Below, one piece after another: positions 1-32,910 of a DNA stretch of 39,569 bases. A model generated the notes under the pieces. The model was not told the origin of the DNA. It searched no databases and was given only the letters and a program-made list of their open reading frames with translations. The stretch is from Octopus bimaculoides (taxonomy: Eukaryota). The position numbers and the translations under genes were made by a program. The number at the start of each line of letters is the position of its first letter. Positions within the stretch are counted from its first letter, which is position 1. The stretch lies in NCBI RefSeq assembly GCF_001194135.2, contig NC_068999.1, forward strand, positions 18,749,423 through 18,788,991, read 5' to 3'.

Positions 1-855
1 ATGTGTATAGTTGTATATGCTTATATATATATATATATGTGTGTAAGAGTTCCAACTCTGTTTTTTATGTTTTATTTATATTCTTGTAAAATTGATCTAT
101 CTCTATATATAGACACGTGAATGTACGTAAGTATATGCGGTTGGCTTGTGTGTGATTTACGTATTCGTGCATGTACGTGCAATAAAACATACATGAGTAT
201 ATATCCGTAAAGACTAATTTTAATTGCCTAAAAATTACTGAAAGATAATATTAATTGATGGTAGTTTGTGATAAAAAAAACTTCACGGAATATTAGTGAT
301 ATTTGACATTAACTAGCAAAAAAAAAGGAAACGTTTGACAGAGTGCAGTATTATCGCCTAACTAAATCATAATTAATTATAATGTGTAATTTTTGTCGTT
401 TAGAGCGTCTAGGTATCGTGTAGGTTATTTCATCGTTAGGTTTACTATATTTAAATAACCTACGCCTAAATGCAGATTCAGATATTCTTATATGTTTCTT
501 TTCTGCTTCTACACATGTAGAGAATAAATAAACAATTTTATTTATATGATTTTTTTTTCTCCAAAGCCTTTCACATCGCAACTAATTCTAAGTCAAGAAA
601 ACTCATACGTCAGATTCCCATCAGAATANNNNNNNNNNAGAAATAGAGTTATTAATATTTCTAAGTCTCTCTAAAGGAGACTACGGCAGCGGTACTGGAA
701 ATTAATAGTTATTGCCAAGCCAACATGGCAGTCCCAAAATTAGGACGAAAGCTGCCGTGAATTAGCTCCAATATATATATATATATGAGGGATGACCACT
801 AAGCGGACATCCATTATCCTAGAAGACCACCTACGGTCTGACCACTAAGAAAAGA

Positions 856-1110
856 TTGTTCTCAACAAAATTCAGCAAATGCCACAGCAAGACAAATGAA
901 AAATTACAAAATATATTCACATTCACGTACATCGCCACCAACACAAAACACACAAACATACATACACACACAGCCACAGACGCACACAAAACACACGCGA
1001 ACAAACACATACACATACATGCTCACATACACACCCTAACAAATATTAATCACATACACACACACCATCGAACCAAATATAAAATACACACAGACCCATA
1101 TACACACGCC
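856..1110. repeat. Degenerate CA-rich low-complexity tract
   Basis: ACAC/ATAC-rich sequence; explains the H/T-rich ORFs 856..1179 and 831..1016. Confidence 0.8.
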
Positions 1111-1130
1111 ACAATAAACCTAAAAACGGC

Positions 1131-1740
1131 CGGTGTCAACAGTGGTTCCAGAAATTCCGAACCGGAAATTACAGTCTAGAAGACAAGCCTCGTCCTGAAA
1201 GACCTGTAGACCTCAACAAGGACGTCACGCAACATCTGGTGGGACAAAATCGCATAACTATTGAGGAACAACAGAGTTGCTTACATTTGGTCATTCAACC
1301 ATTCATCGAAACCTGCGTGCCATCGGGAAACAACCATCTTTGGTTTCAAGACGGAAGTTGTTCTTCCAGCAGGATAATCCTTGGCTATATAGACAGAGGA
1401 CGACATTCCAAAAGCGGGAGCAGTTTGAATGGGAAGCTATGCACCACCCACCATATTCGCCGGATAATGCCCCATCTGATTATCATTTATTCCGTAGTCT
1501 TGAAAATCATTTGGACACAAACGATATGAACTCTATAGACGAGGTCTAAGCAGTACTACATGAGTATTTTTGCATCACAGAAAACTGAATTTTGGGAAAC
1601 TTGCAAGTCTACCAGATTGTTAGAAGAGCATGGCAGTACATGAAGGAAAATATGTTTTAGATTAAAAAAGAACTTTATGTTACTTTTGAAAAATAAAAGA
1701 AGTACAAAAAACACCGCATTATTTATGGGCTGACCAAATA
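1131..1740 (+). mobile_element. Decayed, internally deleted mariner (Tc1/mariner, DD34D-type) transposon; 3' part with right TIR
   Basis: Frameshifted translation gives RCQQWFQKFRTGNYSLEDKPRPERP (from 1131), FGHSTIHRNLRAIGK (HTH), then directly FFQQDN...WEAMHHPPYSPDNAPSDYHLFRSLENHL (mariner YSPDLAPSD motif). Ends in ATTTATGGGCTGACCAAATA followed by TA (1721-1742), a mariner-like TIR end. No left TIR seen. Confidence 0.9.
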
Positions 1741-7877: not shown

Positions 7878-9166
7878 TTCTTTATTAGCCGCAACGGCCG
7901 ACTAAAATAACACTGGACATTACAAAACATGAAAGAGAACAATGCCCCCCCCCCATTTTTTTAACTATAGGCTAAACACACACACTCCAATTGTGCATCT
8001 AAGATGGTGTTGAAATCCCCAATAACACTAATGGTAAGGGCGTACCCAGGAAAACCTTCAGACCTTGAAGTATTCCGGCTGTCCTGCACCTGTCGACGCG
8101 TAAATATCTAACAGTCTTAAGATCCCACCGTTACTAACGTTCTCGTCCAGGACCACTTGTTTACTTTCTGCTTCCAAGAAGACTGACCTTATTTTGGTAT
8201 CCAGACCTATCCGAAACAATACCGCGCTACCGGCACCACTCATTCCTCGCCGAAACGGAGATGCGTAGATCTGGTAGTCATCGAAAATAGGCATGAAAGC
8301 TCGCGGTTCGGTTAGTCTCGATTCAGTATTGTCTATTACATCTATTTCTTGTAACCTGAGGTCGTTGAGTAGGTGACCTTGTTTCCATGGGGATTCAAGG
8401 TCACGTACATTTATGCAAACTATTTAGAGTATGATCATTTGAGTGGATGGTAAGGAGACAAAACGAGAGGTCTACTTACCATTAGCACTCTGGGTTGGGA
8501 GCAGGGCAGATGTTCCGCTCGTTAAATGGAATGTGGTGGTCTCCATGACCAAGGATTTGTAGAGGCTCCAGTACATGTTCGTGTTGAAGCCTCCAACTGC
8601 CCGTGGAAATTTGGATTTTATGCTGCTGTAAGTATGTTGCGATGTTCGAAATATTTGTATGTGTAGTGGCGGTGTGTTATCCATGGAAAACACAAAATCA
8701 GTCGTTTTTATGTTTGTAATATCCTTTATGTATAATAGAAAGTTTGTGTTGTCTGTGTTTATGATGGTGACTTATGTGATGATTTTGTTATTTTTGTTTG
8801 CTTTTTGTGTTGACCCTGTTGTGCATTGTACTGCTGGATGTATCTGCGGTGTTGGTGGTGTCTTTGCTGGTGAAGGTTTTGGAAACGTGGCTGTTAGTGC
8901 GTTGCTGTTGTTGACGGTGATTTTGATTGCCTTTTGGTGGGTATTGCTTGTTTATGTGTTGGTATAATGTAGTGCGTATTTTTCGTAGTCTTTTAAGTAT
9001 GCATTCTGTCCACTCAATTCTAACGGCCTCTCCGCACGACATATCTGAATGGTCAGAGTCGGGAAAGGGTAGTTCCAGTGGGTCGATATTTACTGATTCT
9101 CTTGATCCTCTGGCAAATGCTGGGTCATTGGTGTTTTGTGGTCGCTGTGGGGGAAAGCTGAGTTGG
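7878..9166 (-). mobile_element. Tx1/L1-clade LINE remnant: probable ORF1 tail, ORF2 AP-endonuclease N-terminus, probable 3' UTR; RT absent
   Basis: From ATG 8438: MIIL*IVCINVRDLESPWKQGHLLNDLRLQEIDVI...ESRL...GSAVLFR...VVLD...LRLLDIYAS...QPEYFK, then after a frameshift LVLL/GDFNTILD (GDFN at 8009-8020). These match APE motifs NVRGL, QET, G-A-L, NVYAP and GDFN. AATAAA (7882-7887) precedes a simple-repeat tail. ORF1 assignment of 8470-9166 (T/P-rich, DSDHSDMS) is inference. Confidence 0.8.
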
Positions 9167-9267: not shown

Positions 9268-10214
9268 GAAGTAAGAAGTATCTCTATGTGTGGGGGTGGT
9301 GTAGGTTGAAAGATTGCAAAGATAAGGCACTATACAAGAAATTGAAAACGAATGAAGCTGAAAATAAGTGGCTAAAGAAAAGAAAGGGTGGTCAAAATCA
9401 TAGAGATGCTGAAGATAAGACAGACAGCGAAAAAAGATGACTGTGGATGACTAAACGTGATTTAAAACCGGAAACAGAGGCTCTAATCTGTGCTGTCCAA
9501 GAGCAAGCACTAAGAAAAAAACTATATAAAATACAGAATAAACAACACATCAGAAAATGGTAAGTGCAGAATCTGTGGATAAAACGGTGAAACCGTAGGG
9601 AATTTTACCAGCCAATGTATGCCACTAGCCCAGAAGAAATATACGAGACGCCACGTCAATATAGCCAGGGTTGTCCATTGGACACTTTGTAGCAAGTATG
9701 GACTTGACAGAGCAAAAAATTGGTACGACCACAAACCTGAAGGCATTGACGAAAATAGAAATGCAAAGATCCTATGGAATTTTATGATTCAGTTCGACCA
9801 TGAGACAGAGAAAAGGAAGACAGACATAGTCTCAATTGAGAAGAAAGCAAACTATGCTGTATCATAGATATAGCATGCCCAGTTGACAACAAGGTATGCG
9901 ATAAAGAAGAAAGAGAAATCGAGAGATATGACAGGTTAGAGAGATATGACAGGGACGTTAAACAGTTGTGGTCGATGAAAAAGCTAGCGGTAGTACCGAT
10001 AATTATCGGAGCACTGGGGGTAGTGAGCAAAAATCTCGAGAAGTACGCGGAAGAAATAGGGGCTGCAAGAAGGGTGGAGCACTTGCAGAAAACAGCACTG
10101 CTTAGAACCGCTCAAATACTCCGGAAGGTGCTCGAAAAATAAGCGGTGTTACCTTACTGGTAGTGAACAGCTGACACTGTAGCACATCTCCAGCGTTAGA
10201 AGCTGTGCAAAGGC
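9267..10214 (+). mobile_element. R4/Dong-clade non-LTR retrotransposon, 5'-truncated 3' end (CCHC knuckle plus restriction-like endonuclease), with stops and frameshifts
   Basis: LWMTKRDLKPETEALICAVQEQALR...KCRICG*NGETVGNFTSQC...RRHVNIARVVHW...ILWNF...RKTDIV/IIDIACP...EIERY...VVPIIIGALG...LQKTALLRTAQILRKVLEK* (stop 10140-10142). Short 3' UTR, then (AAT)n. Confidence 0.9.
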
Positions 10215-10934: not shown

Positions 10935-12335
10935 ACTCCTCGAATTACAAATATAATAATCATTGTTGGCCTGCAAAACGTGACCGTGCACTTGGACACA
11001 GTCCCAGAAGGCACCGTACTCACACTCTATGTCTGGAAGCAGTGGAATACTGGGTGACTAGATATAGAGATAAAATAAATGAACGTTTTAAGACGGATCT
11101 CATCACCAAAGCCACACGCATACTATTAGAGGAAAACATTTAAATTTGACCACAAAACACTTAAAGGGTACAGCTATGGATACGCGTTTTGCACCCTAAT
11201 ATGCTAACTTGGTCATGGGGTTCCTATTGGAAAAACCTTTGACCAGGAATTCCAGATATACATCATGAAGCAATGGAAAGGATTTCTTGATGATTGTTTC
11301 ATCCTTTGGGTAAAATCAGACGCGGACCTAAGCACCTTTAAAGAGATATTGACCAATTTGCATCCATCCATAAAATTTACTACAAAATTCAACTTTAATG
11401 AATTACCATTCCTTGACGTTCTCATAAAAACACAAAACTGCAGAGTAACTACAGACATTTATTACAAAAAAACATACACGCATCACTATCTCATATTTGA
11501 CTCTTGCCACCCATCACACATTAAAAGAAATATAACTTATTCCATGGCAAGACGCATATGCACTATAGTAACAGAAACTGCAATACGTAAAACGCGACGA
11601 ACTCCAGGACTTCCTCAAAATACAAAAAATGCCTCCAAAGATTCACAAAGGAAGGTTTTAAAAAGGCATTGAAACTCAACACCATCGAATTAAGAACACC
11701 AAAAGAAACAAATAACAAAAAGACAATACAATTCGTCTCCACACACAGTCCTGTCTTTGCCATAAACATTTTCCAGGTTATAAGATTAGACTTACCCATA
11801 CTTCTACAAAGCCCTAAAATGATGAACCTGATGAACAAAAAAAAAGTCTTACTTAGTAGCAAACGCCAACCGAAAACCCTTAAAAAACACTTCAAAAGGG
11901 CAGAATTCAGATCGGAGAAAGGACCAGAATTCTCAGTAACAGAATGTGGAGACAAAGGATGCGGAATTTGCAACAACAACACTAATTACAAATACCTAGA
12001 ATGTGGTTCCCACTTGAAATTCCAAAGTGGCCCTCTCTTTAAAATCAATGCAAATTTGACCTGTAAAATGCAAAAATTCATATATTGCATTACCTGCCCA
12101 AACTGCAAGGAAAATTATATTAGCGAAACGAACAACTCCCTCTGGCAACGCACTAGAATACAGAGACAACACATAAAACAGGAAGAGTTACGCAAGCTAT
12201 CATTAAGCAAATACCTGGAAGTATGGGGTAATGGAAATTGTTTAATTATTCCATTCTACAAATGCTCACGGAATGACCCAGAATACCGTAAAGCTATGGA
12301 ACTGCGTTTTATAGAACAAATAACCCAAAATTGAA
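10935..12335 (+). mobile_element. Penelope-like retroelement (probably Neptune type), decayed RT plus GIY-YIG endonuclease
   Basis: LEAVEYW...KGTAMDTRFAP...ANLVMGF, KQWKGFLDDCFILW, LHPSIKFT, LPFLDV, TDIYYKKT...SCHPSHIKRNI, Cys linker CGDKGCGIC, then FIYCITCPNCKENYISET (GIY-YIG) and RKAMELRFI. Several frameshifts. A Cys-rich RT-EN linker is typical of Neptune PLEs. Confidence 0.92.
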
Positions 12336-12877
12336 AGATTAAAAGAAGTTTTAAATAGTAAAAAATCAAACAACGAAGATGATAATGAAAAAGAATATGA
12401 TCTGTTAAAAAATGTGATATATAAAAAAGAAAAAAAAACTTCCTATGTCTTTATATACAAATGAAAGGATTCTCTCTTCACTTTTTATATATACAATTAT
12501 ACAATTTAACATCTTAAACTTCTAACAATGTATGTATATATTTATACATTCTTATATGCATGTAGATATGTATGTATGCATGTATGTGTGGGTATATGTG
12601 TGTGTACACGTGTATCTGCATGCATACATGTATGTGTGTGTAAATGTATTTCTATATATATATGTATACATGTATATATGTTTGTATGCGTGTGTATGCA
12701 TATGTACGTATATGTCTATATGTGTATATATATATATATATATNNNNNNNNNNNNNNNNNNNNNNNNNNNNNNNNNNNNNNNNNNNNNNNNNNNNNNNNN
12801 NNNNNNNNNNNNNNNNNNNNNNNNNNNNNNNNNNNNNNNNNNNNNNNNNNNNNNNNNNNNNNNNNNNNNNNNNNNNN

Positions 12878-13655: not shown

Positions 13656-14334
13656 NNNNNNNNNNNNNNNNNNNNNNNNNNNNNNNNNNNNNNNNNNNNN
13701 NNNNNNNNNNNNNNNNNNNNNNNNNNNNNNNNNNNNNNNNNNNNNNNNNNNNNNNNNNNNNNNNNNNNNNNNNNNNNNNNNNNNNNNNNNNNNNNNNNNN
13801 NNNNNNNNNNNNNNNNNNNNNNNNNNNNNNNNNNNNNNNNNNNNNNNNNNNNNNNNNNNNNNNNNNNNNNNNNNNNNNNNNNNNNNNNNNNNNNNNNNNN
13901 NNNNNNNNNNNNNNNNNNNNNNNNNNNNNNNNNNNNNNNNNNNNNNNNNNNNNNNNNNNNNNNNNNNNNNNNNNNNNNNNNNNNNNNNNNNNNNNNNNNN
14001 NNNNNNNNNNNNNNNNNNNNNNNNNNNNNNNNNNNNNNNNNNNNNNNNNNNNNNNNNNNNNNNNNNNNNNNNNNNNNNNNNNNNNNNNNNNNNNNNNNNN
14101 NNNNNNNNNNNNNNNNNNNNNNNNNNNNNNNNNNNNNNNNNNNNNNNNNNNNNNNNNNNNNNNNNNNNNNNNNNNNNNNNNNNNNNNNNNNNNNNNNNNN
14201 NNNNNNNNNNNNNNNNNNNNNNNNNNNNNNNNNNNNNNNNNNNNNNNNNNNNNNNNNNNNNNNNNNNNNNNNNNNNNNNNNNNNNNNNNNNNNNNNNNNN
14301 NNNNNNNNNNNNNNNNNNNNNNNNNNNNNNNNNN
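13656..14334. other. Assembly gap (largest of seven; others 629-638, 12744-12877, 22795-22859, 28870-28879, 29848-29986, 32707-32910)
   Basis: Runs of N, nearly all flanked by microsatellites. Confidence 0.98.
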
Positions 14335-14448: not shown

Positions 14449-15084
14449 AGTTGGTTGTCATAATAAAAGTTAGAGTTTCGGATGCCGGTACTGAAGTCAG
14501 CTCTCATCAGTTATTAACACAACCAAAAACACTATGAAAAGAAAAACACTGAATAAAGGAAAGTTACTCCAATAGGCGTATGTGTGCATATGGACACATG
14601 TACCAATAAACATACACGTGCGCACACACATACACACACATGTGTGTATATATATATATATACATACTCACACACGCGTGTACATATACATACAAACAAT
14701 ACATATGTATATGTCTATACATACGTAAACATACATGCATACAATACACGCATACACGCACATACACACGTATATATAACCATGCACGCATCATTATGTT
14801 CATACACACATCTATATACGCACATGCACATATGTACGCGGATAGACGTATGTACATATAAAAACACATATGTAAAAAAATAAACCGCAGAACATTCACA
14901 TTCGCCACAAAACTTGAATATACATGAGTTATGTATGTATCTACACAAATACAACCTCCTGTCTGTCAAACATATCTACACCTGCAGATATTTAAACGTA
15001 TATACATACGTATATGTATGAAAGAATGAGTCAGGTACAACAGGTAGCGTTTTCCACTCGTGTATATACAATCATTCGTACACA
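14449..15084 (-). repeat. Left arm of a ~630 bp inverted repeat (Penelope-like 3' region/pLTR with a hammerhead-like end)
   Basis: Reverse complement aligns with 16250-16880 (GTGTACGAATGATTGTATAT, CAGGTGTAGAT, TACATACGTCTATCCGCGTA, ACGCCTATTGG, TAATAACTGATGAGA, GAAACTCT, TTTTATTATGACAACCAACT). Confidence 0.85.
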
Positions 15085-15141: not shown

Positions 15142-15294
15142 ATAAAGTAGAATGTTCTCTATGTGGCTTGTGTGTTTTCTCGTCTCTGTTTTGTTTGCAA
15201 TGTCCTGTACCCAGATATGCACCTATACATACAGGTGGATGTCGGTATGCACATACCTGTACGTATATATGCATATACTCATTTACTATTTGTT

Positions 15295-15329
<35 letters not shown>

Positions 15330-15384
15330 TTACACAATAATAAAGGGTGAAAAGCAATATACAGAAAAAATATATAAAGCAATA

Positions 15385-15785
15385 AAAAATATATATGATA
15401 AAACCCTTCGTAAACCGATCTTGCGCTGGTCCATTGGGGTTTGTGGTTAAAGCTACGGCATCATCTTCGTAAATGGCGAAATACATACCAGGAAAAGTTT
15501 TATCTAACGTATCGAGTAGGAATAGTCCAATAAGATCGCATATGCCTGCTCCGTCATATGACCCCATGCTCATTTCGAAGGCACCCTCTGTATCGGTTGT
15601 CGTAACCAACTTTGCGTTTTCACTGAAGAGTAAATTCATTCTAGCATGGAAGACAATGTCCTTATCTTCTGTACTAATTTTTATAAATTCACTTGCGAAG
15701 GTGAGGGCTTTATCGAGCAGTTCCTTAGAAATAGATGTATAGAAGTCAACAATATGAAATTGTGTAAATTTCGCTCTGAGACACT
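15385..15785 (-). mobile_element. Penelope-like RT fragment (resembles the Naiad/Chlamys type)
   Basis: KFTQFHIVDFYTSISKELLDKALTFA...DIVFHARMNLLF...FEMSMGSYDGAGICDLIGLFLL...AIYEDDAV...GPAQDR corresponds to the FDIVDFYPSI, MGSYDGAExCELVG and YRDD motifs. Confidence 0.85.
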
Positions 15786-16249: not shown

Positions 16250-16616
16250 TGTGTACGAATGATTGTATATATACGAGTCTAAAACTTTACCTCTTGTAAT
16301 TGTCTCATTCCTTCATACATATATGTATGTATATATGTTTATATATCTACAGGTGTAGATGTGTTTGACAGTCAGGAGGATGTATTCTTGTACATATATA
16401 AATCATATGTATATTGAAGTTTTGCGTCGAATGTCAATGTTTTACGGTTTATGTTTACGCGAACGTGTTTTTATTTGTACATACGTCTATCCGCGTATGT
16501 ATGCACATGTTCGTATAGAGATGTGTATATGAACATAACGATGCATGCATGGGTTTATATACGTGTGTATATATATCAGTGTCTGTGTTTGCATCTATAT
16601 TTACACGCGTTAGTCC

Positions 16617-16664
<48 letters not shown>

Positions 16665-16880
16665 GTGCGTGTGTGCGTGCGTGTATGTATATGTGTACAT
16701 GTGTACATATGCAGATTCTATGAACGAAGTTTTACTTTCCCCACGCCTATTGGTATAATTCCCCTTCATTTAACAGATTCTTCATAGCATTTCTGCTTGT
16801 CTTAATAACTGATGAGATGCCGCCGGAGCAGAATTTAACCTCTGTATCGGAAACTCTGAGTTTTATTATGACAACCAACT
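16250..16880 (+). repeat. Right arm of the ~630 bp inverted repeat (Penelope-like 3' region/pLTR)
   Basis: See the left arm; ends in a hammerhead-like motif at 16803-16868. Confidence 0.85.
16803..16868 (+). ncRNA. Degenerate type I hammerhead ribozyme motif
   Basis: TAATAA-CTGATGA-GATGC...GTATCG-GAAA-CTCTGAG-TT-TTATTA; stem I is perfect (6 bp) and stem III is near-palindromic. A homologous motif lies on the minus strand at 14461-14516. Confidence 0.6.
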
Positions 16881-22744: not shown

Positions 22745-22859
22745 CCTCTCTCTCTCTATCTCTCTATCTCTCTCTCACTCCCTTGATATATATANNNNNN
22801 NNNNNNNNNNNNNNNNNNNNNNNNNNNNNNNNNNNNNNNNNNNNNNNNNNNNNNNNNNN

Positions 22860-28869: not shown

Positions 28870-28879
28870 NNNNNNNNNN

Positions 28880-28935: not shown

Positions 28936-29792
28936 ATATACATACCTACATATATACATGGACATACATATAATCGATTGTTACATTAACAAACAGATTA
29001 CATTAGCATTTCTGCAATCTATAAATCATTTATATTTTGGTTTGTGTCCAAAGTCTTCAGACAGTCTTTTGATTCTTCTGTAATTATCAAGGAATCACTA
29101 TTTTCATTGGTAATAATATTATGTCGAAGATATTTGTTACGTAACGGAAATATTGAATGCACAGTGTGAGACAATTCAGTGGTAATCGGATCAGTTATTG
29201 TATTGCCTCTCTATAGTATTCAAAATATTTGTTCTTTTCTGTTACTTTATATCATTCTTCAATTAGGTAGTAAGTTAATTGTGACAAATATTTCTACTTC
29301 TGTTATATGCTGTAGGCTAGAAGATCTACGAAATGTCACACATCTTCTTCTCTCACATTGTTCCAATAAATCGTGTGCAAATTAAAAATATATACGGTCT
29401 TCGATTGATCATTTGCAATGCTTCCTTGGTTTCATACATGGGAATCGTAAAGTGTATTTTGACTGTTGTTTTGTTAAATAGAAATTTGAATAGCTTAAAC
29501 ATTACAGTCTTCCTTTTAACTTGCCCTCAATATAATACACAATGCATTTATGTATTGAAATCGTAGAAATTATTTATTACATGTTACATGATTAGAAACG
29601 GATTCACATGTTTCTCATATTTTCTCTCGCGTCTGCATGTTTGTATCGATGTAACAATGTTGGCATGCATGTATGTATATATGCACGTATGTATATATGC
29701 ATGTCTGTATGTCTATGTGTGCGTATATGTATGCATATATATGTGTATTTATTTTATTTGTCTGCCTATCTATATCTATATTTGTGTGTGAG

Positions 29793-29847
<55 letters not shown>

Positions 29848-30155
29848 NNNNNNNNNNNNNNNNNNNNNNNNNNNNNNNNNNNNNNNNNNNNNNNNNNNNN
29901 NNNNNNNNNNNNNNNNNNNNNNNNNNNNNNNNNNNNNNNNNNNNNNNNNNNNNNNNNNNNNNNNNNNNNNNNNNNNNNNNNNNNNNTATAAAGTAGTTGC
30001 ATACTGCGAACTTAGCGTGATGGTCCCAATAAGGGAATATACTATTGCTGTTTAGCCCTAGGAAGCCAGACCGCTTCCTATTAGGCATTGACACACTTTC
30101 TGTGTCCTTATCCATACAAAGGGGCGACAAACGTCTCCAACCAGCCCAGCCTGCA

Positions 30156-30198
30156 TTCAGGGACATGTTTCTGAGACTTTGCTCGTCATCAGCCTGAA
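30156..30198 (-). ncRNA. Minimal type I hammerhead ribozyme, copy 1
   Basis: TTCAGG-CTGATGA-cGAG caaagt CTCa-GAAA-CATG-TC/CCTGAA; predicted GUC cleavage between 30162 and 30161. Confidence 0.85.
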
Positions 30199-30507
30199 GT
30201 AGCTCGGTGGGCTATCTGAAGAAATCTGTCTAAGCTTTGTATGGATATACTATTTCAGTGAAATACTATTCACTGGTAACGAAAATTAGAAATAACGAAT
30301 TTCTAAATCTCTCAGTGAGACTTAAGCAGTAGTGACGCAATAAAGTAGTTGCATACTGCCATCTTAACGTGACAGTCCAAATAAGGGAATATACTATTGC
30401 TGTTTAGCCCTAGGAAGCCAGACCGCTTCCTATTAGGCCTTGACACACTTTCGGTGCCCTTATCCATACAAAGGGGCGACAAACTCATCCAACCAGCCCA
30501 GCCTGCA

Positions 30508-30550
30508 TTCAGGGACATGTTTCTGAGACTTTGCTCGTCATCAGCCTGAA
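30508..30550 (-). ncRNA. Minimal type I hammerhead ribozyme, copy 2
   Basis: Identical to copy 1; predicted GUC cleavage between 30514 and 30513. Confidence 0.85.
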
Positions 30551-30820
30551 GTAGCACGGCGGGCTAGCTGAAGAAATCTGTCGAAGCTTTGTATGGATCT
30601 GATGACATATCTTATGATATTTACTTTGTTTTATATTATACTCATTTATTGTGCTTTTAATTGTTAATTTTTCTATATGTGATAGTGGATTTTCATCGAT
30701 GAGTTCTTGAAACTTGGTTATTTTCCTTAAAACTATATATTTTATCTATATAATTTTGATTTTTTATAAATTGATTTTAATTGAGTTTTTACCTGTAATT
30801 TTGGATTTTGTCCCGAATAT

Positions 30821-30874
<54 letters not shown>

Positions 30875-31429
30875 GGGAAGAGATAGAGTGAGAGAGAGGA
30901 GAGATACCTGTATGCATGTCTATATATATTATCTATGCGTGTGTGGATATGTGGAATGTATGCGTATGTGTTAGAGATGTTTGTGTGGATGTGTATATGT
31001 TATACGTGATACGACATGGATTGTTAAATATTTATTTATGCGCACATAAATACCCACACAAAATTTACACTTATGACAGGCTCATATGCTTATAGCACAT
31101 GAATCTAAAGGAACTCGCAGACATGCATATCCTACTCAGACATACCACACCTTTGTTCTGTACACACAAACGATACCCCTTCATAGAAACTAGACCCAAT
31201 AATGTTATAACCTTCACAGAGAAACACTCTTACATCCGTGTTTCTCGGGCTCTTTTATTGATGCAAATACATAGCTTGTAATCAAAGAAAAGCACTTATG
31301 AGAAACACGCGCCCACACACACACACACACATGTATATATGTAGAATGTTGAAAAGAAACACACGAGTTGATACGTATGAGGATAACAAGACAAGGTAGA
31401 AAATGCTAAAATAATTTCACGACGAAGAA

Positions 31430-32706: not shown

Positions 32707-32910
32707 NNNNNNNNNNNNNNNNNNNNNNNNNNNNNNNNNNNNNNNNNNNNNNNNNNNNNNNNNNNNNNNNNNNNNNNNNNNNNNNNNNNNNNNNNNNNNN
32801 NNNNNNNNNNNNNNNNNNNNNNNNNNNNNNNNNNNNNNNNNNNNNNNNNNNNNNNNNNNNNNNNNNNNNNNNNNNNNNNNNNNNNNNNNNNNNNNNNNNN
32901 NNNNNNNNNN

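What the first reader, a model, noticed from the sequence alone, without database searches (positions are those of the whole stretch)
29988..30598. Tandem hammerhead-ribozyme repeat: candidate retrozyme producing a 352-nt self-cleaved, circularisable RNA
Seen: two direct repeats offset by exactly 352 bp, each with an identical minus-strand type I hammerhead (UUCAGG-CUGAUGA-stem II-GAAA-CAUG-UC/CCUGAA, canonical GUC site). All 16 inter-copy substitutions fall outside the 43-nt ribozyme. There is no RT or transposase inside. Established: metazoan non-LTR retrozymes are tandem arrays of short hammerhead-bearing monomers that are transcribed, self-cleaved and circularised, and are proposed to be mobilised by Penelope-like elements, which are abundant here. 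Inference: cleavage at 30514/30513 and 30162/30161 releases a 352-nt monomer. I do not recall such a family being described from octopus, but could not check.
Basis: partly seen in the sequence, partly recalled or inferred. Interest (0 to 1): 0.88.

Follow-up and report, generated by a model that had tools for sequence, protein, structure and literature searches.

The report
Hammerhead-ribozyme tandem repeat, retrozyme-like
A 352-bp non-coding repeat, present as at least 1.74 tandem copies, carries a small self-cutting "hammerhead" RNA motif in each copy. It has the anatomy of the animal "retrozyme" mobile elements already known from mussels, corals and salamanders, so it is a plausible but ordinary new example whose activity is untested.

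Summary
Two direct repeats lie exactly 352 bp apart, with 16 differences in 259 aligned bases. Each carries the same 43-nt minus-strand type I hammerhead, and cleavage at 30514/30513 and 30162/30161 would release 352 nt.

- The lower copy runs straight into a 139-N assembly gap, so the array size is unknown.
- Position 10.1/11.1 at the base of helix II is a C·A mismatch.
- A more stable alternative hairpin sequesters part of the catalytic core.
- Helix III is only the palindrome ACAUGU, so the ribozyme can form only as a dimer.
- Rfam finds nothing at curated thresholds.
- "No substitutions in the ribozyme" is weak evidence (p about 0.055).

In favour:
- The motif is far beyond chance.
- The 611-nt transcript folds by minimum free energy into a double hammerhead.
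- The 352-nt monomer is unusually structured (z = -7.7).
- Helix III is identical to that of a validated axolotl retrozyme.
- A Penelope-like element lies in the same window, and the unit shares no sequence with it.

Verdict: this is a probable non-LTR retrozyme-type element, a new member of a known kind. Activity, copy number and independence from a Penelope terminal repeat could not be tested here. Interest is moderate to low.

The parts
30247..30598 (-). Repeat unit, copy A: one complete 352-nt unit (unit position 1 = 30598)
   Evidence: 100% self-match; the junction to copy B at 30247/30246 lies inside contiguous sequence
29988..30246 (-). Repeat unit, copy B: first 259 nt of the unit. It ends one base (29987) short of the assembly gap
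   Evidence: 243/259 identical to copy A
29848..29986 (.). Assembly gap of 139 N next to copy B. The rest of copy B, and any further units, would lie here
30508..30550 (-). Type I hammerhead, copy A: helix I UUCAGG/CCUGAA, core CUGAUGA...GAAA, helix II CGAG-CAAAGU-CUCA with C10.1·A11.1, helix III ACAUGU, GUC site. Predicted cleavage is between 30514 and 30513. A UAC bulge lies at 30553-30551
30156..30198 (-). Type I hammerhead, copy B, identical in sequence. Predicted cleavage is between 30162 and 30161
30162..30513 (-). Predicted 352-nt RNA monomer released by the two cleavages. Its ends are held together by helix I at the base of a long imperfect stem of roughly 45 bp, capped by a branched domain
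   Evidence: MFE -128.8 kcal/mol, z = -7.69; circular fold -122.3 kcal/mol, 65% paired, ACAUGU unpaired
30462..30598 (-). 137-nt hairpin (unit positions 1-137) with the hammerhead at its tip, closed by a perfect 12-bp stem AUCCAUACAAAG/CUUUGUAUGGAU. The copy B equivalent is 30110-30246
   Evidence: -71.2 kcal/mol, z = -8.9 (copy A); -62.6 kcal/mol, z = -7.3 (copy B)
30599..30823 (-). 225-nt A-rich stretch between the 5' end of the array and a (TA)n run. It may be flank or a 5' extension of the insertion; this is unresolved
   Evidence: no significant match elsewhere in the window
30824..30851 (.). (TA)n microsatellite on one side of the locus. A second run, 29797-29846, lies on the other side, just before the gap. 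This may be the target microsatellite, but such runs occur about every 1.9 kb here
   Evidence: 21 TA runs in 39.6 kb. Penelope-like elements favour microsatellite targets (PMC8557442)

Best explanation
The locus is a short tandem array, at least 1.74 units before an assembly gap, of a non-autonomous, non-coding, hammerhead-bearing retroelement. It is of the metazoan non-LTR retrozyme kind and sits in a mollusc-like genome that also carries Penelope-like elements.

Proposed mechanism:
1. The minus strand is transcribed through two or more units.
2. The helix III of each hammerhead is only the palindrome ACAUGU and cannot close as a hairpin. Two neighbouring copies therefore pair through it and swap helix I strands, giving a double hammerhead.
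3. [quoted passage not shown]
4. Helix I, at the base of a long quasi-rod, holds the two ends side by side.
5. A host RtcB-type tRNA ligase seals them into a circle.
6. In the monomeric circle helix III cannot form, so the circle is not re-cut.
7. A Penelope-like RT/GIY-YIG enzyme copies the circle or a multimer, giving new tandem insertions.

What is shown here: the repeat, the motif, its non-random nature, the predicted double-hammerhead and monomer folds, the absence of coding capacity, and a Penelope element in the window. What is inferred from published work on other animals: transcription, cleavage, ligation and mobilisation.

This particular copy pair is probably old. The two units differ by 6.2%, and the locus may no longer be active.
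For: Repeat geometry and identical hammerheads.

Beyond chance: 0.017 loci expected against 3 observed; 0.13 against 3 for the simpler pattern.

Canonical metazoan type I architecture: the alignment to Rfam Hammerhead_HH9 matches the UAC bulge 5' of a 6-bp helix I, all of CUGAUGA, loop 2 CAAA, GAAAC and GUC.

Double hammerhead: the minimum-free-energy fold of the 611-nt transcript pairs ACAUGU 79-84 with 431-436. Pair probabilities are 0.75-0.84 for this trans helix III, and 0.76-0.85 for swapped helix I against 0.12-0.14 for the local hairpins.

Structured RNA: the monomer folds with z = -7.7 and the hammerhead hairpin with z = -8.9. The circular monomer leaves ACAUGU unpaired.

No coding capacity. 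GC is 43.5%, within the published bound of <45-50% (PMC7229834).

Precedents in validated retrozymes (supplement of PMC7229834):
- Axolotl Ax330 has the identical GAAACAUGUC helix III. It cleaves poorly as a monomer and well as a dimer.
- Axolotl Ax353 has a U·U mismatch at the base of helix II and still cleaves.
- Mussel retrozyme units are 350-390 bp.

Penelope-like RT/GIY-YIG remnant at 11208-12331. The unit is unrelated in sequence to it and to the other hammerhead-bearing repeat in the window.
Against: - The C10.1·A11.1 mismatch falls at a position described as a highly conserved G-C pair (PMC4209133).
- The hairpin CUGA-U-GAC/GUC-UCAG sequesters core nucleotides. It is predicted to be more stable than the 3-bp catalytic helix II (-6.9 against -1.1 kcal/mol; whole motif -12.1 against -5.7).
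- Rfam gives no hit at curated thresholds. The best score is 16.9 bits against a gathering score of 52.
- The double-hammerhead fold beats the alternative by only 1.4 kcal/mol.
- Only one locus with 1.74 copies is available, and TRF does not call it.
- The substitutions in the long stem are disruptive rather than compensatory. Copy B's hairpin is 8.6 kcal/mol weaker, so there is no covariation support.
- Conservation of the ribozyme between the two copies is not significant (P = 0.055).
- No relatives were found in any searchable collection. None of those collections holds animal genomes, so this says little.
- There are no expression data.
Confidence: 0.58

Rival explanations
1. The unit is the terminal repeat (pLTR or 3' end) of an autonomous Penelope-like family, present here as an ORF-less, 5'-truncated partial tandem. 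It would then not be an independently propagating retrozyme family.
For: - Penelope insertions are typically 5'-truncated partial tandems with hammerheads in the terminal repeats, and they favour microsatellite targets (PMC8557442; PMC4209133).
- In Xenopus, 24 of 57 retrozyme families match Penelope termini (bioRxiv 10.64898/2026.07.22.740005).
- A Penelope element is in the window.
- The locus lies between (TA)n runs.
Against: - Only 352 bp separate the two hammerheads, which leaves no room for an ORF, and there is no ORF remnant on either flank.
- The unit has no similarity to the Penelope 3' region at 12332-12743 or to the 14.4-16.9 kb inverted repeat.
- Its hammerhead has the canonical retrozyme architecture: 6-bp helix I, UAC bulge, four-position helix II and CAAA loop. 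The Penelope-type motifs in this window instead have a long helix II of about 7-8 bp in the consensus. This is the same split as reported in coral.
- The two readings are not cleanly separable, because retrozymes are proposed to derive from such termini.
Confidence: 0.2
2. The locus is a dead relic. It is a locally duplicated or decayed hammerhead-bearing satellite or SINE-like repeat whose ribozyme no longer cleaves, and no 352-nt RNA is produced.
For: - The C·A mismatch at 10.1/11.1 and the stronger competing hairpin.
- The sub-threshold Rfam score.
- The 6.2% divergence between adjacent units, with non-compensatory changes in the stem.
- Only 1.74 copies are visible.
- Minimal hammerheads of this type cleave poorly in vitro.
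Against: - Every invariant core nucleotide, the GUC site, 6-bp helix I, the UAC bulge and the CAAA loop are intact and identical in both copies.
- A mismatch at the base of helix II, and the same ACAUGU helix III, each occur in experimentally active axolotl retrozyme ribozymes.
- The double-hammerhead fold is the predicted ground state of the dimer.
Confidence: 0.2
3. The finding is a chance hammerhead-like motif, or the tandem duplication is an assembly artefact beside the gap.
For: The array abuts a 139-N gap. Draft assemblies can duplicate sequence near gaps.
Against: - Both copies and their junction lie on the same side of the gap in uninterrupted sequence, and they differ at 16 sites.
- Chance expectation of the motif is 0.017 per window.
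- The extra matches to the family consensus (UAC, CAAA, palindromic helix III) and the strongly non-random folds argue against chance.
Confidence: 0.02

Closest known systems
Metazoan non-LTR retrozymes (Cervera & de la Pena 2020, NAR, PMC7229834), e.g. mussel Mg353 and axolotl Ax330 / Ax353
   Same: - A type I hammerhead in every unit of a short, non-coding, low-GC tandem repeat.
- A unit of 352 bp, against 350-390 bp in mussel and 330/350 bp in axolotl.
- A highly self-paired monomer.
- Coexistence with Penelope-like elements.
- Helix III GAAACAUGUC identical to Ax330, which works only as a dimer.
- A mismatch at the base of helix II, as in Ax353 (U·U there, C·A here).
   Different: - No sequence similarity outside the ribozyme core.
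- It combines both weakening features, and adds a competing hairpin that uses the extra A.
- Only one locus with 1.74 copies is seen.
- Expression, cleavage and circularity are untested.
- No cephalopod example turned up in the searchable literature.
Newt / salamander satellite 2 hammerhead (Epstein & Gall; Forster et al. 1988, as cited in PMC7229834 and PMC4209133)
   Same: - About 330-bp tandem units.
- A type I hammerhead with a one- to two-bp helix III and a palindromic loop, active only as a double hammerhead.
- The predicted double-hammerhead fold is reproduced here.
   Different: A different phylum and an unrelated unit sequence. [quoted passage not shown]
[quoted passage not shown]
   Same: Type I topology, a palindromic helix III region, and a dimer mode of action. 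They are found in the same genomes and may be the evolutionary source.
   Different: - The Penelope minimal motifs have a long helix II (7-8 bp), a short helix I (4-5 bp), a conserved G10.1-C11.1 pair and no loop-loop contact nucleotides. They flank a roughly 3-kb RT/GIY-YIG ORF.
- Here helix I is 6 bp with a UAC bulge, helix II has four positions with a CAAAGU loop, and the two motifs are 352 bp apart with no ORF.
- Motifs of the Penelope type do occur elsewhere in the window, at 14461-14516 (-) and 16803-16868 (+).
Rfam Hammerhead_HH9 (RF02275) / canonical metazoan type I hammerheads
   Same: The best Rfam match. The UAC bulge, 6-bp helix I, CUGAUGA, CAAA loop 2, GAAAC and GUC all align.
   Different: The score is 16.9 bits against a gathering score of 52. 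The closing pair of helix II is non-standard and the HH9 helix III hairpin is missing. It is not a member by Rfam's criterion.

Membership tests
Hammerhead ribozyme, type I | Invariant core C3-U4-G5-A6-N7-G8-A9, G12-A13-A14, the A15.1-U16.1 pair, and H17 (not G) at the cleavage site | tested here: met
   CUGAUGA ... GAAA ... U-C are present and identical in both copies
Hammerhead ribozyme, type I | Three helices around the core, with helix I open and helices II and III closed | tested here: inconclusive
   - Helix I: 6 bp, perfect.
- Helix II: 3 Watson-Crick pairs plus C10.1·A11.1, and it competes with a more stable hairpin.
- Helix III: only ACAUGU, which is not closable in cis. It forms in trans in the predicted dimer fold.
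Hammerhead ribozyme, type I | Reaches the curated Rfam gathering score of a hammerhead model | tested here: not met
   No hit at gathering score. Hammerhead_HH9 scores 16.9 bits against 52.
Hammerhead ribozyme, type I | Site-specific self-cleavage | not testable with these tools
   Requires in vitro transcription of monomer and dimer constructs
Metazoan non-LTR retrozyme | Hammerhead in each unit of a short tandem repeat (about 150-450 bp, from dimers to multimers) | tested here: met
   Period 352, with two complete hammerheads in 1.74 visible units. The array is cut by a gap, and TRF does not report it.
Metazoan non-LTR retrozyme | Non-coding, with no LTR/PBS/PPT, and GC below about 45-50% | tested here: met
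   The longest ORF is 81 aa with no homologue. There are no tRNA-like or other Rfam features. GC is 43.5%. PBS and PPT were not searched for specifically.
Metazoan non-LTR retrozyme | Monomer RNA predicted to be stable and highly self-paired | tested here: met
   -128.8 kcal/mol, z = -7.7. The circular fold is 65% paired.
Metazoan non-LTR retrozyme | Coexistence in the genome with Penelope-like elements that carry minimal hammerheads | tested here: met
   An RT-thumb/GIY-YIG remnant lies at 11208-12331. Penelope-type hammerhead-like motifs lie at 14461-14516 and 16803-16868.
Metazoan non-LTR retrozyme | Multi-copy dispersed family in the genome | not testable with these tools
   No animal genome collection is available. 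There is no second copy in the window, and the pattern scans of metagenome, viral and prokaryote collections were empty.
Metazoan non-LTR retrozyme | Expressed as linear and circular monomer RNA | not testable with these tools
   Needs northern blots, RNase R treatment or total-RNA sequencing
Penelope-like element pseudo-LTR pair | Two hammerhead-bearing repeats flanking an RT plus GIY-YIG ORF of about 3 kb | tested here: not met
   The spacing is 352 bp, with no ORF between or beside the repeats
Penelope-like element pseudo-LTR pair | Sequence identity of the unit to the terminus of a known Penelope family | tested here: inconclusive
   There is no similarity to the Penelope-related sequences in this window. 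Repeat libraries and the rest of the genome were not available.

The most novel reading that the evidence does not exclude
The C10.1·A11.1 variant with its competing CUGA/UCAG hairpin is the functional consensus of a so far undescribed cephalopod retrozyme family. The ribozyme would act as a conformational switch: it is kept off in the monomeric circle and in the nascent single unit, and switched on only when two units pair. This would extend the sequence rules for natural hammerheads at the helix II base, and would add cephalopods to the animals that make abundant ribozyme-derived circular RNAs.
Probability: 0.15. Interest if true: 0.5.

Novelty: new member of a known kind. Interest (0 to 1): 0.35.

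Why it matters
If active, the element would add a cephalopod-type mollusc to the animals known to make small circular RNAs through hammerhead ribozymes. It would also give a natural example of a hammerhead that tolerates a C·A mismatch at the normally G-C 10.1/11.1 position.

It shows a practical blind spot as well. Rfam thresholds and TRF-based retrozyme pipelines both miss this locus, so such elements are probably under-counted in draft assemblies, where arrays collapse into gaps.

It does not change the current picture of retrozymes or of Penelope-like elements.

Tried and rejected
- Rfam at gathering score over the whole window, and at E<=10 over 713 nt, found no hammerhead. The RAGATH-27 and LLnc147 hits at E of 1 to 2 are chance.
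- I used the 81-aa ORF inside the unit as a handle to fetch related copies from the 5.8-billion-protein collection. It found no candidates.
- Exact and helix-II-degenerate hammerhead patterns were scanned against the metagenome, viral and prokaryotic genome collections, with 0 hits. These collections do not hold animal genomes, so the result is uninformative about family size.
- Pfam on the window's ORF fragments found nothing useful, even at E<=10. The word-indexed search with the GIY-YIG ORF also found nothing. The exhaustive HMMER search was needed to confirm the Penelope element.
- The ORF at 15289-15783 (-) looked RT-like by eye but does not align significantly with a Penelope protein (E 5.7). 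That reading was dropped.
- BLAST of the unit against four experimentally validated retrozymes gave only 9-12-nt matches.
- I looked for covariation between the two copies. The changes weaken the stem rather than compensate, and two sequences give no statistical power.
- TRF found no array.
- A literature search for the effect of 10.1/11.1 mismatches gave nothing decisive. The Lunse et al. 2017 paper on dimeric Penelope hammerheads is not held.

Full report
**Observation**

The minus-strand read of 29700-30900 and the repeat finder (family D5) show a direct repeat, 29988-30246 and 30340-30598, with a start-to-start spacing of exactly 352. An ungapped alignment gives 243/259 identities. The repeat junction at 30247/30246 lies in uninterrupted sequence. 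Copy B ends one base (29987) before a run of 139 N at 29848-29986. What is visible is therefore 1.74 units, and the real array may be longer. TRF does not report it. No other copy or fragment of the unit occurs in the 39.6-kb window.

**The ribozyme**

Both copies carry, on the minus strand, UAC-UUCAGG-CUGAUGA-CGAG-CAAAGU-CUCA-GAAA-CAUG-UC-CCUGAA, at 30553-30508 and 30201-30156. All invariant hammerhead core positions are present. Helix I is a perfect 6 bp and the cleavage triplet is GUC. C17 is at 30514 and 30162, so two cuts would release 352 nt.

The motif is well beyond chance. CTGATGA-N8-30-GAAAC is expected 0.13 times in the window and is seen three times. A structural descriptor with helix I of at least 6 bp is expected 0.017 times per dinucleotide shuffle and is also seen three times, two of them being these copies.

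Rfam does not call it at gathering thresholds, nor at E<=10 in a 713-nt search. In a 61-nt search the best model is Hammerhead_HH9, at 16.9 bits against a gathering score of 52, E 0.028. That alignment is still informative. The UAC 5' of helix I, CUGAUGA, loop 2 CAAA, GAAAC and GUC all match the consensus of canonical metazoan type I hammerheads.

1. The pair at the base of helix II (10.1/11.1) is C·A. Only three Watson-Crick pairs (GAG/CUC) remain. This position is described as a highly conserved G-C pair (PMC4209133).
2. The extra A makes UCAG complementary to the core's CUGA. The predicted local ground state is therefore the hairpin CUGA-U-GAC/GUC-UCAG, at -6.9 kcal/mol against -1.1 for the catalytic helix II. 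For the whole motif the figures are -12.1 against -5.7.
3. Helix III is only A15.1-C-A-U-G-U16.1, which cannot close as a hairpin but is a perfect palindrome.

**Dimer mode and RNA architecture**

The 611-nt minus-strand transcript of the visible array has a double hammerhead as its minimum-free-energy structure.
- ACAUGU of copy A (positions 79-84) pairs with ACAUGU of copy B (431-436).
- The helix I strands are swapped between the copies.
- Both C17 residues are unpaired.

In the ensemble these trans pairs have probabilities of 0.75-0.85, against 0.12-0.14 for the two local hairpins. The energy margin is only 1.4 kcal/mol.

Each hammerhead sits at the tip of a 137-nt hairpin closed by a perfect 12-bp stem (-71.2 kcal/mol, z = -8.9 for copy A; -62.6 kcal/mol, z = -7.3 for copy B). 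The predicted 352-nt monomer folds to -128.8 kcal/mol (z = -7.7). Its two ends are held together by helix I at the base of a long quasi-rod capped by a branched domain. As a circle it is 65% paired and leaves ACAUGU single-stranded. A monomeric circle could therefore not assemble the ribozyme. This is the regulatory logic long proposed for dimer-only hammerheads (PMC4209133).

**Conservation**

All 16 substitutions avoid the 43-nt ribozyme, but under uniform substitution this has P = 0.055. The 68-nt substitution-free run that contains the ribozyme has P of about 0.11, and there is another clean run of 59 nt. The changes in the long stem weaken it rather than compensate. With two sequences there is no covariation evidence. 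If both units arose in one insertion event, the 6.2% divergence implies an old insertion; this is inference.

**Context**

The ORF at 11208-11669 (+) has 8,428 relatives at E<=0.001. Most of the full-length relatives scanned (about 700-820 aa) carry RVT_1 followed by a C-terminal GIY-YIG domain. The next ORF, 11591-12331 (+), aligns with residues 272-493 of the best hit, including its GIY-YIG domain (43% identity, E 1e-59). This is the 3' half of an endonuclease-positive Penelope-like element with a frameshift. Its nearest named relatives are from Mytilus edulis, so the window is mollusc-like. The octopus origin could not be verified.

A second structure is an inverted repeat, 14449-15084 against 16250-16880 (73-83% identity). 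Each arm ends about 12 nt after a hammerhead-like motif, uaauaa-CUGAUGA-(long helix II)-GAAAC-ucuNaN-UU-uuauua. The inferred consensus helix II (GAUGCCG.../...CGGCAUC) matches the long-helix-II minimal hammerheads of Penelope pseudo-LTRs. Both copies are damaged.

The 352-nt unit shares no sequence with either element. Its ribozyme is of the canonical type rather than the Penelope type. This mirrors the split reported in coral.

The locus lies between (TA)n runs at 29797-29846 and 30824-30851. That fits the microsatellite preference of Penelope elements, but such runs occur about every 1.9 kb here, so it proves little.

**Comparison with what is known**

Cervera and de la Pena (2020, PMC7229834) defined metazoan non-LTR retrozymes by these features:
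- short tandem repeats of low GC (150-450 bp, from dimers to multimers);
- a type I hammerhead per unit;
- no coding capacity;
- expression as highly self-paired circular RNAs of 170-400 nt;
- sealing most likely by a tRNA ligase;
- coexistence with Penelope-like elements.

Mussel units are 350-390 bp. A 2026 preprint argues from Xenopus that retrozymes derive from Penelope terminal repeats. [quoted passage not shown]

The construct sequences in the NAR supplement give two precedents. Axolotl Ax330 has exactly the same GAAACAUGUC helix III; it gave 6% cleavage as a monomer and was efficient as a dimer. Axolotl Ax353 has a U·U mismatch at the base of helix II and is still active. Outside the core, the present unit has no similarity to the coral, mussel or axolotl units. 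This is expected, because the sequences are species-specific.

Full-text searches found no description of such elements in octopus or cephalopods. The 2020 paper does state that analogous repeats occur in many invertebrate phyla.

**Verdict**

The interpretation as a retrozyme-type element is the best reading (about 0.58). The structural membership criteria that could be tested are met. Rfam membership is not met. Activity, expression, family size and independence from a Penelope terminus remain untested.

The main rivals are:
- a Penelope-terminus-derived partial tandem (0.2);
- an inactive relic (0.2);
- chance or assembly artefact, which is effectively excluded.

This is a new member of a known kind. 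It is of moderate to low interest, with a modest chance that the C·A variant and its competing hairpin are a functional peculiarity.

Noticed in passing
window 11208-12331 (+): This is the 3' half of an endonuclease-positive Penelope-like element. It consists of two overlapping ORFs in different frames, RT thumb/linker and then GIY-YIG, so there is at least one frameshift. The best relative is 63% identical. Most full-length relatives scanned carry RVT_1 plus GIY-YIG, and the nearest named ones are from Mytilus edulis. Its 3' untranslated region (12332-12743) runs into microsatellite and a 134-N gap, and no hammerhead is visible.
   Followed up: yes
window 14449-15084 and 16250-16880; motifs at 14461-14516 (-) and 16803-16868 (+): A roughly 640-bp inverted repeat (73-83% identity). 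Each arm ends about 12 nt after a Penelope-type minimal hammerhead-like motif: helix I UAAUAA/UUAUUA, a long helix II, and a palindromic ACUCUGAGU in the plus copy. Both motifs are damaged. The minus copy has a 10-nt deletion that removes the 5' strand of helix II. The plus copy has substitutions in the 3' strand.
   Followed up: partly
window 15289-15783 (-): A 165-aa open frame between the inverted-repeat arms looks polymerase-like by eye (FHIVDFYTSISKELL..., MGSYDGAGICDL...). It has no Pfam hit and no significant alignment to a Penelope protein. Its identity is unknown.
   Followed up: partly
window 1083-1546 (+): Two overlapping frames read like a decayed mariner/Tc1-type transposase (…FRTGNYSLEDKPRPERP…, …HHPPYSPDNAPSDYHLF…). 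This rests only on recognition by eye. Pfam gave nothing except a weak DUF7003 hit.
   Followed up: no
window 8061-8423 (-) and 9583-10139 (+): A weak Exo_endo_phos-like fragment (E 0.088) lies at 8061-8423. Nearby frames on the opposite strand resemble C-terminal parts of non-LTR retrotransposon proteins. They are probably remnants of one or two non-LTR elements.
   Followed up: no
window 629-638, 12744-12877, 13656-14334, 22795-22859, 28870-28879, 29848-29986, 32707-32910: There are seven assembly gaps (1,241 N in total). Several of those inspected (12744, 28870, 29848) sit directly beside (TA)n or (CA)n microsatellites or repeats. The window has 34% GC and 21 (TA)n runs of at least 12 bp. 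It is a draft, repeat-rich animal scaffold in which tandem arrays are likely to be collapsed.
   Followed up: partly
window 30599-30823 (-): A 225-nt A-rich, unique stretch separates the 5' end of the array from the (TA)n(GA)n run. The array starts exactly at the base of the 137-nt hairpin (unit position 1). It is unresolved whether this stretch is flank or part of the inserted element, such as a 'tail' like those described for Penelope insertions.
   Followed up: partly
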